Virus record (IMG/VR): IMGVR_UViG_3300043786_000977
Span: 62,001 to 126,000 of that record
Reading direction: 5' to 3' (one strand)
DNA length: 64,000 bases
The translations under genes and the position numbers were made by a program. Positions 59,753 to 63,058 of this stretch are shown in pieces. Within the stretch, counting starts at the first letter, position 1, and every line of letters starts with the position of its first letter. Under the pieces are notes generated by a model. The model was not told the origin of the DNA. It made no database searches and saw nothing but the letters and a program-made list of their open reading frames with translations.

Positions 59753-60067
59753 GTGACTACCGAGGTGGATTCTGTGAGTAGACCTAAGAAAACGAAAGTG
59801 ATAGGATTTGGTAGATTCCTTAAGGACAAACGTATTCACTGTGGTATGTCACAATACGCTATAGCAGCATCTTTGGGTGTTACTGTACGTAGTGTAAGAT
59901 ACTGGGAATACGACAGTAAGGTACCTTCTGTAGAACATAGACAACGTCTAGAAGAGTTTCTACAGTTTACCTTACCTGACTCTATTCAAGCTACTAGGTT
60001 ACTACGTGGCTTGCCTGTACAATCTCAACCCTTTTTCACAGACCTAAACCAGGAGGAAGACGGATGA
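59753..60067 (+). CDS. XRE-family HTH regulator
   Basis: FG.FLKDKR...GMSQ..IA..LGVT..SV..WE....VP. Confidence 0.85.
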   Translation: MTTEVDSVSRPKKTKVIGFGRFLKDKRIHCGMSQYAIAASLGVTVRSVRYWEYDSKVPSVEHRQRLEEFLQFTLPDSIQATRLLRGLPVQSQPFFTDLNQEEDG

Positions 60068-60858
60068 GTATGCTGCCTAAAGTTGAATGTCCCGAGTGTC
60101 ACGGACTGTTCGATCCCAGGGGTCTCGGACCTCACATGAAGAAGCACGGCATCACTGCCAGTGTCACTGTAACACGAGCCGGCTGGTCGGATGATCAGCT
60201 GAACAGTATCGCAACTGAATTCGTGTTGCTGCGTATGGATCAACCGTTGGCTGACGCCCACGAGTTGTTACAGACGGCCGTGAACAAAGCACTACCTCCG
60301 GCAGAGGTACGGCCGGTGCGTATGACGTCTGGGTTGATCGACGCGGTCACTAAGGCGTGGCAGACGCTTAACGATAACACGGTCGAGGTACCGATTGTCG
60401 TCGAGCGCCAGGTACCGCCCCCGCCCTTCAACTACCGAGTCGAGTTGAGCAAGATTCCCTTTGAGGATTTGCTGCAGGTGTTTGGGGCCCGCATGGGCGC
60501 CATCATCGATCACATGGGTACGTCGAGAGCGGTCATCGAATCTTATGCGAAACCGAAGGTTGTTGAACCGACGCGGCCACGCAAGCCGCGGGTTGCGATC
60601 ATCGGTTTGTTGTCTGATCAACAACAGGCTATCAGCGCGTCTGCTGAGGCTGGCGATTTCGATCTGCGCTTCATCAACAAGGAGCGTGCCAACCAGTCTA
60701 TCAATTCGGCCGTAGATTGGATTGTCGTGCAGAAACACACTGCACACGGATGGTGGAACAGCGCCCGCGACAAGATCGGAGCTGACCGCGTACTATTCGC
60801 GGCCGGCGGTATCTCGTCGGTGTTGGAGTGTCTGCGTAATGTGAAGAGCCGTGCATAA
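60064..60858 (+). CDS. Protein with N-terminal C2H2 finger and C-terminal DUF2325-like domain
   Basis: CPEC......GLGPHMKKH; VAIIGLL...AH...GGISS. Confidence 0.65.
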   Translation: MSMLPKVECPECHGLFDPRGLGPHMKKHGITASVTVTRAGWSDDQLNSIATEFVLLRMDQPLADAHELLQTAVNKALPPAEVRPVRMTSGLIDAVTKAWQTLNDNTVEVPIVVERQVPPPPFNYRVELSKIPFEDLLQVFGARMGAIIDHMGTSRAVIESYAKPKVVEPTRPRKPRVAIIGLLSDQQQAISASAEAGDFDLRFINKERANQSINSAVDWIVVQKHTAHGWWNSARDKIGADRVLFAAGGISSVLECLRNVKSRA

Positions 60859-60905: not shown

Positions 60906-60981
60906 AGTCGGGTAACTCAGCTGGGAGAGTGCCAGGTCTACACCCTGGATGTCGCAGGTTCAATCCCTGTCCCGACTACCA
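60906..60981 (+). tRNA. tRNA-Val(TAC), with C at position 33
   Basis: Acceptor AGTCGGG/CCCGACT, A73, encoded CCA; anticodon arm CCAGG-TCTACAC-CCTGG; T-arm GCAGG-TTCAATC-CCTGT. Confidence 0.9.
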
Positions 60982-60983
60982 TT

Positions 60984-61177
60984 TTTGAAGTCAAGGCTAG
61001 TGCAGTAGCCGGTAAGGAAAGGTAATGCCACAAGGCAAATTCCTCAGCAGGTGGTCGTCATACCCAGTCAACAACCGCAAGGTTTCCAAGACTGCATTTT
61101 CTTGGTAGTTGGCGGATTGCCGGTAGTGCTAAGAGCGACCTGGTTGTATGGGTGGGGAATCCATACTTGATTTCAAA
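60984..61177 (+). ncRNA. Candidate ~195-nt multi-branched RNA with kissing loops
   Basis: 12-bp closing stem, at least six internal helices, complementary loops GTGCAG/CTGCAT. Confidence 0.7.
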
Positions 61178-61184
61178 TTTCTAT

Positions 61185-61269
61185 TGCGGGGTGTCGAGAA
61201 GTTGGTATCTCAGCAGGCTCATAACCTGCCGCGTAAGCCTCGTGGGTTCAAGTCCCACCCCCGCAACCA
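61185..61269 (+). tRNA. tRNA-Met(CAT), initiator-like but atypical
   Basis: TGCGGGG/CCCCGCA-A-CCA; GCAGG-CTCATAA-CCTGC; GTGGG-TTCAAGT-CCCAC; 12-nt variable region. Confidence 0.88.
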
Positions 61270-61359: not shown

Positions 61360-61385
61360 TCTATTTTTACAACAAGGAGAGTCTG

Positions 61386-61715
61386 ATGGCGACATATCGT
61401 TACGTTGCGCGTTCGAGTTATGGTAATCGGTGGGAAGGCCAGCTAACTGCACGTAGTTCCGAATCTGTTGCAGCTGCATTAACCACTGCAGGTTGGATCC
61501 CACTTTCAATCGTTATGGTGTCACGCACTAACGCGCCCGACGTACCTAGTACACTGACAGTTACGCCTCCTACATCCTCCACTGATGCACGCGTCCGTCC
61601 ACAGCGCCCGACCAGTGGTGGTTGGTCAACTGAACAACCTACCTGGTTTGATAAACTGTGTGCGCGCTTGCGCCACATATTCCTGGTCGATAAGTCTAAC
61701 AAGCAACTCATGTGA
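61386..61715 (+). CDS. Small protein with PilC/GspF N-terminal-like domain
   Basis: MATYRYVARSSYGNRWEGQLTARSSESVAAALTTAGWIPLSI; AAGGAG RBS. Confidence 0.7.
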   Translation: MATYRYVARSSYGNRWEGQLTARSSESVAAALTTAGWIPLSIVMVSRTNAPDVPSTLTVTPPTSSTDARVRPQRPTSGGWSTEQPTWFDKLCARLRHIFLVDKSNKQLM

Positions 61716-61724
61716 AAGGTTAGT

Positions 61725-62012
61725 ATGTCTGCAGAGGCGATAGCGAACAGTATACTTGCTGGTAGATTTACGGATCAACTGGCCGCCGTTGAGGCCGTGT
61801 TGATGTATTTCTACAACGTAGACCCTGTAGCTCAGATCAAAGGGTTATTCGACAATCCTGCACCGTCGTATATCGCCCAGTGGTCCCATCTCTACCGACA
61901 GGGTTTGACTGAGTGGTGGGGTCATCTTGACGTGGAACACAAACGTGCCTACGTCAGCGCGGCCCTAGATCGTTATGGTGCAGAAGCATACAAGCGCATA
62001 GGTGTTGCATGA
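61725..62012 (+). CDS. Hypothetical protein
   Basis: AAGGT RBS; ATGA overlap downstream. Confidence 0.6.
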   Translation: MSAEAIANSILAGRFTDQLAAVEAVLMYFYNVDPVAQIKGLFDNPAPSYIAQWSHLYRQGLTEWWGHLDVEHKRAYVSAALDRYGAEAYKRIGVA

Positions 62013-63058
62013 AGTTCTTATTTTCTGGGGCTAAAGAGCTACTCACGTCGGCCGTTGTGCCAGAAGACGTATTCGGTCCCGCCCTTGATGAAGTTGAGAG
62101 TGCTTACCGTGCACTAGCAATGGTCACACATCCGGATAAGCACAAAGGCTCTGCCAAGGCCGCGGATGCGTTCCAACTCCTACAGACTTGGAAAGCCAAA
62201 GCTGATACCAAGATAGCCAACGGTACCTACGGAGATCGTAACGCTCAAGCCGCGGTCACGATCACACACGGAAAGCACACCTACGTGGTGACTAACCGTA
62301 TCGACTCGGGTGACCTCGCTGAAGTGTACGGCGGCGTGGATGCTGCGAAGAAGCCCATCATCATCAAGGTTGTGCGTTCGCCTGCCAATAATGACCTGCT
62401 TGTCAATGAGGCCAAGGTGCTGGAGGACATTCATGAACAGGCTGAAACTGCCGAGTCTGTGCTTCTGGTGCATTTGCCTAAACTGGTATCCGCGTTCCAA
62501 CTCGTTGAGGGTGCGGCACGCCGTCAGGTGAATATCTTCGAGGTGATTCCGGACACCTGTACGCTGGCGGATGTCATCAAGGCCTATCCTGAGGGTATCG
62601 ATCCCCGTGACGTGGCGTGGATGTTCAACCGTATTCTAGGCGGTTTGGTCCTGACACACAAATGTGGCTACGTGCACGGCGCACTGACACCAGACCATAT
62701 ACTGATCGTACCCGAGACGCATAACGGTATACTGATCGATTGGAGCTACTCGGTGCCGGTCGGCGAGAAGATCAAGGCCATATCACCAAAGTGGAAAGGT
62801 TACTATCCTGCTGAAGTACTGACGGGACATCCGTCAACCTTTGGTGTGGATCTGTACATGGCGGCACGTTGTGCCTCTGCGCTACTCGGTACACAACCGC
62901 GTCCGCGCTTGTTAGCTGGTTTTCTACGTGCGTGTTTGTTGGGTCCGCGGCATAGACCGCAGAACGCCCACGAGACGTTCGTAGAATTCAGAGAGTTGTT
63001 GGCTACCCTGTTTGGTAAGCCGACGTTTCGTAGGTTCACATTATCAACAACAAAGTAG
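62009..63058 (+). CDS. J-domain plus protein-kinase-like (pseudokinase) fusion
   Basis: YRALA...HPDK...AFQ.L J-domain; GDLAEVY, IIKV, NE, HGALTPDHI, IDWS kinase fold. Confidence 0.85.
   Translation: MKFLFSGAKELLTSAVVPEDVFGPALDEVESAYRALAMVTHPDKHKGSAKAADAFQLLQTWKAKADTKIANGTYGDRNAQAAVTITHGKHTYVVTNRIDSGDLAEVYGGVDAAKKPIIIKVVRSPANNDLLVNEAKVLEDIHEQAETAESVLLVHLPKLVSAFQLVEGAARRQVNIFEVIPDTCTLADVIKAYPEGIDPRDVAWMFNRILGGLVLTHKCGYVHGALTPDHILIVPETHNGILIDWSYSVPVGEKIKAISPKWKGYYPAEVLTGHPSTFGVDLYMAARCASALLGTQPRPRLLAGFLRACLLGPRHRPQNAHETFVEFRELLATLFGKPTFRRFTLSTTK

What the first reader, a model, noticed from the sequence alone, without database searches (positions are those of the whole stretch)
61386..61715. 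Phage mimic of the PilC/GspF N-terminus: candidate pilus or T2SS inhibitor
Seen: the first ~42 aa follow the pattern M.xY.Y.A....G....G...A.S...V...L...G..P..I that begins PilC/GspF platform proteins. A Pro/Thr linker and a short amphipathic helix follow, with no T2SSF domains or transmembrane segments. Known: the PilC N-terminal cytoplasmic region engages the PilB ATPase, and several phages block type IV pili to prevent superinfection. Inference: a dominant-negative decoy that titrates PilB/GspE, which would hint at a pilus receptor.
Basis: partly seen in the sequence, partly recalled or inferred. Interest (0 to 1): 0.7.

Follow-up and report, generated by a model that had tools for sequence, protein, structure and literature searches.

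The report
Phage copy of pilus-platform N-domain
A 209-kb freshwater phage encodes a 109-residue protein whose first 45 residues are a true stand-alone copy of the small N-terminal domain of bacterial PilC/GspF pilus and secretion platform proteins; this probably lets it meddle with the host's pilus machine, but its binding partner is unknown.

Summary
ORF 61386-61715 (+) is preceded by AAGGAG and encodes 109 aa.

- **N-domain:** residues 1-45 are a homologue of the PilC/GspF N-domain (Pfam PF28597, T2SSF_N). An HMM I built from 40 cellular N-domains, chosen only by their core domain, scores it 21.6 bits (E 2e-6), in register from Met1. The next-best phage ORF scores 3.7 bits and the best shuffle 11.2 bits.
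- **Fold:** AlphaFold gives a ββαβ fold at pLDDT ~96. The best Foldseek hits are GspF/PilC N-termini (EpsF, 0.6 Å).
- **Rest of the protein:** a disordered Pro/Thr/Ser linker, then a conserved cationic amphipathic helix (87-104) unrelated to T2SSF.
- **Rarity:** the phage has no T2SSF core. In 200 bacterial genomes the domain was found only fused to a ~400-aa platform protein.

Published work models ATPase contacts through Cyto1/Cyto2, not this domain. The N-domain is dispensable and has no known partner. Complex prediction with a PilB-like ATPase gave no verdict. The host is unknown (weak actinobacterial hints).

Best reading: a membrane-proximal mimic of the platform's N-domain that perturbs a type IV filament machine. 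No such phage protein is described in the papers and collections I searched.

The parts
61374..61379 (+). Shine-Dalgarno sequence AAGGAG, six bases before the ATG
   Evidence: Read directly from the sequence
61386..61715 (+). ORF of 109 aa (stop included): stand-alone T2SSF_N protein
   Evidence: DNA is identical in contigs from four other samples. The phage is present in ~20 lake-water runs from 2016-2024.
61386..61520 (+). Residues 1-45: T2SSF N-domain (PF28597), ββαβ (E2-9, E15-22, H25-35, E38-45)
   Evidence: Pfam tag; own HMM 21.6 bits, E 2.2e-6; shuffles reach at most 11.2 bits; AF2 pLDDT ~96; Foldseek top hits are GspF/PilC N-termini
61521..61643 (+). Residues 46-86: disordered Pro/Thr/Ser-rich linker, variable in length and sequence between lineages
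   Evidence: pLDDT ~52; 52% P+T+S; indels relative to P0002 and the X15 variant
61644..61697 (+). Residues 87-104: conserved cationic amphipathic helix with hydrophobic face W87 F88 L91 C92 L95 I98 F99 and net charge +2; unrelated to T2SSF
   Evidence: AF2 helix at pLDDT 71-78. No similarity to a full-length T2SSF HMM. The last 30 residues are identical in P0002. In the conserved C-terminal part (codons 66-104, which includes this helix), 6 codons change synonymously against 1 non-synonymous change in the X15 variant.
61725..62012 (+). Downstream 95-aa ORF, 9 bases after the stop. No family assigned. It overlaps the start of the kinase gene, so it is probably co-transcribed.
   Evidence: The same spacing is seen on the P0002 contig.
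62009..63058 (+). DnaJ-domain plus Ser/Thr-kinase-like protein (phrog_3043), in the same gene string
61185..61269 (+). tRNA-Met (CAT), immediately upstream. tRNA-Val (TAC) lies at 60906-60981.

Best explanation
The gene encodes a stand-alone copy of the N-domain of a bacterial type IV filament platform protein (PilC/GspF family). It was presumably captured from the 5' end of a host platform gene. A flexible linker joins it to a cationic amphipathic helix.

Shown: the homology, the fold and the architecture. The domain is otherwise found only at the head of ~400-aa platform proteins. The protein is conserved in at least three phage lineages.

Inferred: the helix holds the protein at the cytoplasmic face of the membrane or on a partner protein. 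This recreates the native arrangement of N-domain, flexible tether and membrane anchor without the platform core. The free N-domain then competes with the platform's own N-domain for its still unidentified partner at the base of the machine. That would lower or re-tune pilus (or pseudopilus) assembly during infection. Plausible pay-offs are superinfection exclusion, or keeping progeny from adsorbing to infected cells.
For: - Homology and register.
- Fold.
- No platform core, ATPase, pilin signal or PilZ anywhere in the phage.
- In 79 Verrucomicrobiota and 121 Actinomycetota genomes, almost every listed N-domain match heads a ~400-450 aa frame. The short frames I inspected are contig ends or frameshifts; a few others were not inspected.
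- Selection: the fold-defining residues are invariant in three lineages, and the C-terminal part shows 6 codons with synonymous change against 1 non-synonymous change.
- The PulF N-domain contributes measurably to pilus assembly and secretion, and a pilG N-domain defect is suppressed by loss of PilT, so the domain has a real accessory role to interfere with (PMC10790770).
- Phages are known to disable type IV pili with small proteins such as Aqs1, Tip, Zip and PfsE (PMC11656802, PMC13436744, PMC8764522).
Against: - No binding partner is known for the cellular N-domain, and deleting it only reduces function, so a pure decoy might have a mild effect.
- The phage helix α1 has no Lys or Arg. Cellular N-domains average 3.6 there, and in PulF simulations such basic residues contact anionic lipids. 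The mimic is therefore imperfect on one surface.
- The exposed β2 face varies between lineages, which is not what a surface binding a conserved target would show. The interface could instead lie on the invariant β1 strand.
- Complex prediction gave no verdict.
- The host is unknown and no RNA data are available.
- One low-coverage variant contig carries a frame-breaking 8-nt deletion in the linker.
Confidence: 0.4

Rival explanations
1. One reading: the N-domain titrates the extension ATPase PilB/GspE as a dominant-negative decoy.
For: Older two-hybrid and pull-down work maps ATPase binding to the 'N-terminal cytoplasmic' part of PilC/GspF, which contains this domain (my recollection of Takhar 2013 and Bischof 2016, both cited in PMC11656802). 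Known phage inhibitors Aqs1 and Tip do target PilB.
Against: The AlphaFold PulE6:PulF3 model was built without the N-domain and contacts the ATPase through Cyto1/Cyto2. The N-domain is dispensable and sits peripherally. Complex prediction with a PilB-like ATPase scored 0.00, which counts as no verdict.
Confidence: 0.15
2. The conserved C-terminal amphipathic helix is the effector, for example docking on a hydrophobic patch of a machine component or on the membrane. The N-domain serves only to target or stabilise it.
For: The C-terminal 30 residues are identical between P0001 and P0002. They are far more constrained than the N-domain: 6 codons with synonymous change against 1 non-synonymous, compared with 11 against 10 (plus N49Y) in the N-domain. 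Aqs1 binds a hydrophobic patch on the PilB N2 domain (PMC13436744).
Against: The helix has no detectable similarity to anything. Its high conservation could partly reflect recent exchange of the downstream module between lineages.
Confidence: 0.2
3. The ββαβ module has been re-used for a non-pilus target, for example binding RNA polymerase as T7 Gp2 and the ε subunit (YkzG) do, or another host enzyme as the UDG inhibitor p56 does.
For: Weak fold matches to T7 Gp2, YkzG/ε, SPβ YorX and p56. The PulF paper notes the same structural neighbours. The gene lies among regulators and a kinase rather than structural genes.
Against: Those matches are much weaker (E 0.15-0.5, 11-21% identity) than the matches to GspF/PilC N-termini (E ~1e-3, up to 31% identity, 0.6 Å). 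Sequence homology points to T2SSF_N.
Confidence: 0.15
4. It is a functionless or decaying remnant of a captured host gene fragment.
For: The family is tiny: one homologue among 5.8 billion proteins and none in the viral collections. One variant contig has a frame-breaking deletion.
Against: The gene has a strong ribosome-binding site and precise domain boundaries. Fold residues are retained in three lineages. Purifying selection acts on the C-terminal part. The DNA is unchanged across lakes from 2016 to 2024.
Confidence: 0.1

Closest known systems
N-domain of GspF/PilC platform proteins (Pfam PF28597 T2SSF_N; PulF residues 1-54)
   Same: Homologous sequence in exact register from Met1. Same ββαβ fold. 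Followed by a flexible linker. The near-invariant positions M1, Y6, G13, G18 and L32 are kept.
   Different: It is not attached to Cyto1/Cyto2 or to transmembrane segments. Helix α1 lacks the usual Arg and Lys. It carries an unrelated C-terminal amphipathic helix. It is encoded by a phage.
PfsE of Pf filamentous phages (30-aa inner-membrane protein that binds PilC and blocks pilus extension)
   Same: A small phage protein aimed at the platform level of the type IV pilus machine; membrane-associated (PMC8764522).
   Different: PfsE is not derived from a pilus component and inserts into the membrane. The present protein is a copy of part of the platform itself, and its activity is untested.
Aqs1 (DMS3) and Tip (D3112), phage inhibitors of the PilB ATPase
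   Same: Small phage proteins that disable type IV filament machines, giving superinfection exclusion (PMC13436744, PMC11656802).
   Different: They are helical proteins with no homology to pilus parts and bind the PilB N2 domain. The present protein matched no PHROG family, and no ATPase binding is shown.
T7 Gp2 / RNA polymerase ε (YkzG) / SPβ YorX
   Same: Small ββαβ proteins, some phage-encoded, that act by binding a host machine.
   Different: Only weak structural resemblance (11-15% identity) and no sequence relationship. The sequence signal here is to T2SSF_N.

Membership tests
T2SSF_N domain (Pfam PF28597) | Significant match to the family profile | tested here: met
   Precomputed PF28597 hit, unmarked (E<=1e-5), for P0001 and P0002. 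The model is absent from my local Pfam copy, so I rebuilt a profile from 40 independent N-domains: 21.6 bits, E 2.2e-6. Shuffles reach at most 11.2 bits.
T2SSF_N domain (Pfam PF28597) | ββαβ fold of ~45-55 residues at the extreme N-terminus, followed by a flexible loop | tested here: met
   AF2 gives E2-9, E15-22, H25-35, E38-45 at pLDDT ~96, then a disordered stretch at 46-86. Foldseek gives EpsF 1-45 at rmsd 0.6 Å and XpsF at 31% identity. The fold matches the one described in PMC10790770.
T2SSF platform protein (GspF/PilC/TadB-C) | Two T2SSF (PF00482) cytoplasmic helical domains | tested here: not met
   No PF00482 in the ORF or anywhere in the phage genome. A full-length T2SSF HMM aligns only to residues 1-50.
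T2SSF platform protein (GspF/PilC/TadB-C) | Three transmembrane segments | tested here: not met
   There is no clear transmembrane segment. The only hydrophobic stretch is residues 28-46 (Kyte-Doolittle mean 1.71), inside the folded domain.
Phage-encoded type IV pilus inhibitors (Aqs1, Tip, Zip, PfsE) | Sequence relationship to a described inhibitor family | tested here: not met
   No PHROG family at E<=1. No tblastn match in 50,697 phage records at E<=10.
Phage-encoded type IV pilus inhibitors (Aqs1, Tip, Zip, PfsE) | Binds a machine component and reduces piliation or pilus-phage infection | not testable with these tools
   This needs expression and interaction assays. The one complex prediction gave no verdict.
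Gp2/ε-type RNA-polymerase binders | ββαβ fold with a conserved exposed Arg on the sheet that contacts RNA polymerase | tested here: inconclusive
   Fold resemblance is weak (E 0.2-0.5). Arg5 and Arg9 on β1 are invariant in the three phage variants, but no equivalence to the Gp2 Arg was established.

The most novel reading that the evidence does not exclude
A phage has detached the orphan N-domain of the pilus/secretion platform protein and uses it, tethered by its own amphipathic helix, as a self-mimic that competes for the domain's natural partner. This would be the first anti-pilus or anti-secretion protein derived from a component of the machine itself. It would also be a natural probe for the still unknown function and partner of the PilC/GspF N-domain.
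Probability: 0.3. Interest if true: 0.75.

Novelty: new variant of a known kind. Interest (0 to 1): 0.55.

Why it matters
The first ~50 residues of PilC/GspF are conserved across bacteria. Their deletion lowers pilus assembly and secretion, yet no partner or mechanism is known (PMC10790770). A phage protein consisting of just this domain plus a tether is a natural experiment. If it perturbs the machine, pulling it down should identify what the N-domain binds. It would also add a new principle, mimicry by a piece of the machine, to the known phage anti-pilus proteins that bind PilB, PilZ or PilC. If the host is a freshwater actinobacterium, it would point to pilus or competence biology in an abundant and poorly tractable group.

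Tried and rejected
- **Local Pfam and PHROGs:** no hit for the ORF, because the local Pfam copy lacks PF28597.
- **BLASTP against E. coli K-12 GspF:** nothing found; the domain is too short and diverged for a pairwise search.
- **phmmer of residues 1-55 against PDB sequences:** only spurious hits, including a designed β-barrel and Fab chains.
- **Foldseek against the PDB:** nothing below E 0.039, because no T2SSF N-domain has a solved structure.
- **Exhaustive HMMER over 1.84 billion representatives:** only the protein itself, plus one hit (P0003) through the low-complexity linker, which I discounted.
- **GspF region search:** returned only E. coli-like variants, useless for a diverse profile.
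- **Viral contigs (two scans), the phage collection (tblastn) and the metagenome scan:** no further stand-alone relatives. The one metagenome hit is a cellular full-length platform gene.
- **Complex prediction** with the PilB-like ATPase next to the Smithella-MAG platform gene (L010): score 0.00, no verdict, so no evidence either way.
- **ESM Atlas:** lists many short PF28597-only clusters. I do not treat these as stand-alone genes, because in assembled genomes the short frames I inspected are contig ends or frameshifts.
- **T2SS versus T4P:** the closest cellular proteins fall below both the GspF and the PilC equivalog cut-offs.
- **Donor or host lineage from N-domain identity:** actinobacterial N-domains average 31% and the others 25%, which is not decisive.
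- **RNA runs:** none was listed.

Full report
**What is there.** ORF 61386-61715 on the + strand encodes 109 residues. AAGGAG sits six bases before the ATG. The gene follows tRNA-Val and tRNA-Met and heads a tight string of + strand genes. These are a 95-aa ORF starting 9 bases after its stop, a DnaJ-plus-kinase-like gene that overlaps that ORF, a 77-aa ORF, and a phrog_2971 protein.

The window is bases 62001-126000 of a 208,908-bp virus record with direct terminal repeats and 52% G+C. The record encodes a tail sheath and a baseplate wedge, so it is a large myovirus. Contigs from four other samples carry DNA identical to this region. About 20 lake-water metagenome runs from 2016 to 2024 hold the sequence. 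This is a real and persistent freshwater phage.

**Is the resemblance real?** Yes, on four independent lines.

- *Pfam.* The precomputed annotation of this protein and of its only homologue (P0002, 117 aa, 62% identity by BLASTP) is PF28597, 'T2SSF_N'. The hit is unmarked, which means E<=1e-5. The same tag accompanies PF00482 in genuine GspF proteins. My local Pfam copy lacks this model, which is why my own scan was empty.
- *NCBIfam.* There are weak but perfectly registered hits. XpsF gives E 6.7e-4 with residues 1-51 on profile positions 1-51. GspF TIGR02120 aligns residues 4-48 on 1-44.
- *An independent profile.* I collected T2SSF proteins by their core domain only (PF00482 or TIGR02120) from Desulfobacterota, Verrucomicrobiota, Omnitrophota and Bacillota genomes, plus E. 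coli GspF. I cut out their first 58 residues, which gave 40 distinct sequences, and built an HMM. The phage ORF scores 21.6 bits, E 2.2e-6, aligned 1-47 to 1-47. P0002 scores 14.5 bits. The next-best of the 271 phage ORFs scores 3.7 bits. Among the shuffles of the ORF's N-terminus that HMMER scored (17,246 of 20,000 generated), the maximum is 11.2 bits. The alignment is gapless over residues 1-45 and keeps the near-invariant M1, Y6, G13, G18 and L32.
- *Close cellular matches.* A pattern scan of bacterial genomes found eight loci with 38-51% identity to residues 1 to about 40. All eight are the first residues of 400-408 aa T2SSF proteins.

**Structure.** AlphaFold2 was given an alignment of the phage protein, P0002 and 34 cellular N-domains. 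It returned β2-9, β15-22, α25-35 and β38-45 at pLDDT ~96. Residues 46-86 are disordered (pLDDT ~52), and a helix spans 87-104 (pLDDT 71-78). This is the ββαβ fold described for the PulF N-domain (PMC10790770).

Foldseek against Swiss-Prot models puts GspF/PilC N-termini in the ten best places. V. cholerae EpsF residues 1-45 superpose at 0.6 Å, and XpsF is 31% identical at E 1e-3. RNA polymerase ε and SPβ YorX follow at E 0.2-0.3 and 15% identity. No T2SSF N-domain has a solved structure. The PDB gives only weak neighbours: eL20, p56, T7 Gp2 and YkzG.

**What it is not.** A full-length T2SSF HMM aligns only to residues 1-50, and the C-terminal part scores below zero. The whole phage genome has no PF00482 core, no T2SSE ATPase, no pilin N-methylation signal and no PilZ. 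It is therefore not a platform protein and not part of a phage-borne pilus system.

**How unusual is the architecture?** In 79 Verrucomicrobiota genomes, almost all of the 150 listed N-domain matches (21 more were not listed) lie at the head of open frames of about 400-450 aa. The short frames I inspected are a frameshifted platform gene, a contig end and a truncated gene.

In 121 Actinomycetota genomes, 86 have a match, nearly always one per genome and again in ~400-420 aa frames. The one 129-aa frame is cut by a contig end, and a few other shorter frames were not inspected. That count of 86 of 121 includes three unpublished genomes (G235, G282, G322). Without them it is 83 of 118, and none of the loci I analysed comes from them.

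The ESM Atlas lists many short PF28597-only clusters. Given the genome result, these are most simply fragments truncated in metagenome assemblies. Beyond P0002, no relative of the phage protein was found among 5.8 billion clustered proteins, 1.84 billion representatives, 50,697 phage records, the viral contig collection or the metagenome scan.

**Differences from the cellular domain.** Helix α1 of cellular N-domains is basic (A-R-x-x-L-R-x-x-G), with a mean of 3.6 Lys or Arg and a minimum of 1. The phage helix (SESVAAALTTAG) has none. This makes residues 28-46 borderline hydrophobic (Kyte-Doolittle mean 1.71). In PulF simulations the basic residues of the N-domain contact anionic lipids. The phage copy has lost that feature.

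The phage protein instead carries a C-terminal helix with a contiguous aromatic and aliphatic face (W87 F88 L91 C92 L95 I98 F99) and a net charge of +2. A helix like that could bind the membrane surface or a hydrophobic patch on a partner.

**Selection.** P0001 and P0002 share the N-domain scaffold and are identical over the last 30 residues, while the linker differs in sequence and length. Laying public contigs on the gene revealed the P0002 lineage in run X9 and a third variant in run X15.

| Region (X15 vs window) | Codons with synonymous change | Non-synonymous changes | Other |
|---|---|---|---|
| N-domain, codons 1-48 | 11 | 10 | N49Y just beyond |
| C-terminal part, codons 66-104 | 6 | 1 (S81T) | one codon deleted |

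The N-domain replacements fall at positions 12, 15, 17, 19, 21, 23, 26, 31, 34 and 38. These are alternate positions of β2 plus helix positions, while every fold-defining residue is kept. So both parts are translated and constrained. The C-terminal helix is the most constrained part, and one exposed face of the N-domain evolves quickly.

A caveat applies to the X15 contig, which has a word depth of 4.7. It also carries an 8-nt deletion in the linker that would place a stop after residue 48, and a 1-nt insertion near the end. Whether this is a decaying copy or an assembly error cannot be told from one contig.

**Mechanism.** PMC10790770 shows that residues 1-54 of PulF are a separate, mobile N-domain.

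- Deleting the domain leaves the protein stable and oligomeric. Function is significantly reduced but not abolished.
- The authors cite the same non-essential role in P. aeruginosa PilC and N. meningitidis PilG. A pilG N-domain defect is suppressed by removing PilT.
- No co-evolution links the domain to the rest of PulF.
- The PulE6:PulF3 model was built without the N-domain and contacts the ATPase N2 domain through Cyto1 and Cyto2.
- The authors state that the domain's partners remain to be identified.

A V. cholerae model likewise puts the ATPases against the PilC core. 'Titrates PilB/GspE' is therefore one possibility among several, not a consequence of known biology.

I ran the suggested complex prediction. 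I used the MshEN-T2SSE ATPase encoded directly upstream of a Smithella-MAG platform gene whose N-domain is about 40% identical to the phage's. The score was 0.00 and the tool returned no verdict. This is no evidence either way.

My best reading is that the protein recreates the native geometry of N-domain, flexible tether and membrane-proximal anchor, and competes for whatever the platform's N-domain binds. This rests on the architecture, the selection pattern and the precedent of phage anti-pilus proteins (Aqs1, Tip, Zip, PfsE). I give it about 0.4.

The rivals are:

- the C-helix is the real effector (0.2);
- the specific ATPase-decoy version (0.15);
- a re-used fold aimed at a non-pilus target such as RNA polymerase (0.15);
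- a decaying remnant (0.1).

**Host and target machine.** The closest cellular platform proteins fall below both the GspF and the PilC equivalog cut-offs, so T2SS and T4P cannot be told apart by sequence. Host hints conflict.

- The kinase and its neighbour form a cassette shared with Cluster C mycobacteriophages at 37-43% identity. The neighbour also matches Rhizobium and Vibrio phages.
- The named cellular relatives of the phage's adenylosuccinate synthetase are almost all Actinomycetota, at 41-44% identity.
- The tail sheath resembles those of ~185-kb Salmonella and Vibrio phages at 28-30% identity.
- Actinobacterial N-domains are only marginally closer to the phage's (31% against 25% mean identity).

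If the host is an actinobacterium, which has no outer membrane and therefore no T2SS (general knowledge), the target would be its single N-domain-bearing platform protein. That would mean a type IV or competence pilus. Nothing here speaks to the phage's receptor.

**Novelty.** Phage proteins that disable type IV pili are known. A phage-encoded copy of a piece of the platform itself was not found in any collection or in the literature searches. I rate it a new variant of a known kind, with moderate interest. Its main value is as a natural handle on the unexplained N-domain of PilC/GspF.

Noticed in passing
window 62009-63058 and 63325-64353: A DnaJ-domain plus Ser/Thr-kinase-like protein (phrog_3043) and a phrog_2971 protein lie two genes apart here. 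In Cluster C mycobacteriophages (for example Dietrick, 148945-149976 and 150045-150710) the same two genes lie side by side, at 37-43% identity. The phrog_2971 protein also matches Rhizobium and Vibrio phages. This looks like a conserved two-gene cassette of unknown role shared across very different phages.
   Followed up: partly
genome 126426-127691 (just beyond the window end; L063:426-1688): The phage encodes an adenylosuccinate synthetase (PF00709). Its named cellular relatives (41-44% identity) are almost all Actinomycetota, including Nocardia and Actinomadura. Closer unnamed relatives (50-56%) sit on other large metagenomic contigs. This is a weak host hint.
   Followed up: partly
window 61532-61539 and after 61698, seen in run X15: One low-depth contig of a ~90%-identical relative has an 8-nt deletion in the linker (stop after residue 48) and a 1-nt insertion near the 3' end. 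The C-terminal coding part remains conserved in the original frame. It is either a recently broken copy or an assembly error.
   Followed up: partly
window 60982-61178, seen in run X9: A contig of the P0002-like lineage joins 60982 to 61178, skipping 195 bases between the tRNA-Val and tRNA-Met genes. The inter-tRNA spacer therefore varies between lineages.
   Followed up: no
window 59753-60858: An HTH_3 (XRE-type) regulator of 104 aa is followed, with overlapping stop and start codons, by a 264-aa protein that opens with a weak C2H2-like zinc-finger motif. Both lie just upstream of the tRNAs and look like a regulatory module.
   Followed up: no
window 61469-61523 (residues 28-46): The α1-β3 part of the phage N-domain is unusually hydrophobic for this domain family (Kyte-Doolittle mean 1.71 over 19 residues) because all basic residues of the helix are replaced. 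The X15 variant has an Asp in the middle, which argues against a membrane-spanning segment.
   Followed up: partly
L068 (G174:C17:1000-3200): A Verrucomicrobiota platform gene is split into two frames, covering HMM positions 1-146 and 145-404. It is either a frameshifted pseudogene or a sequencing error.
   Followed up: no
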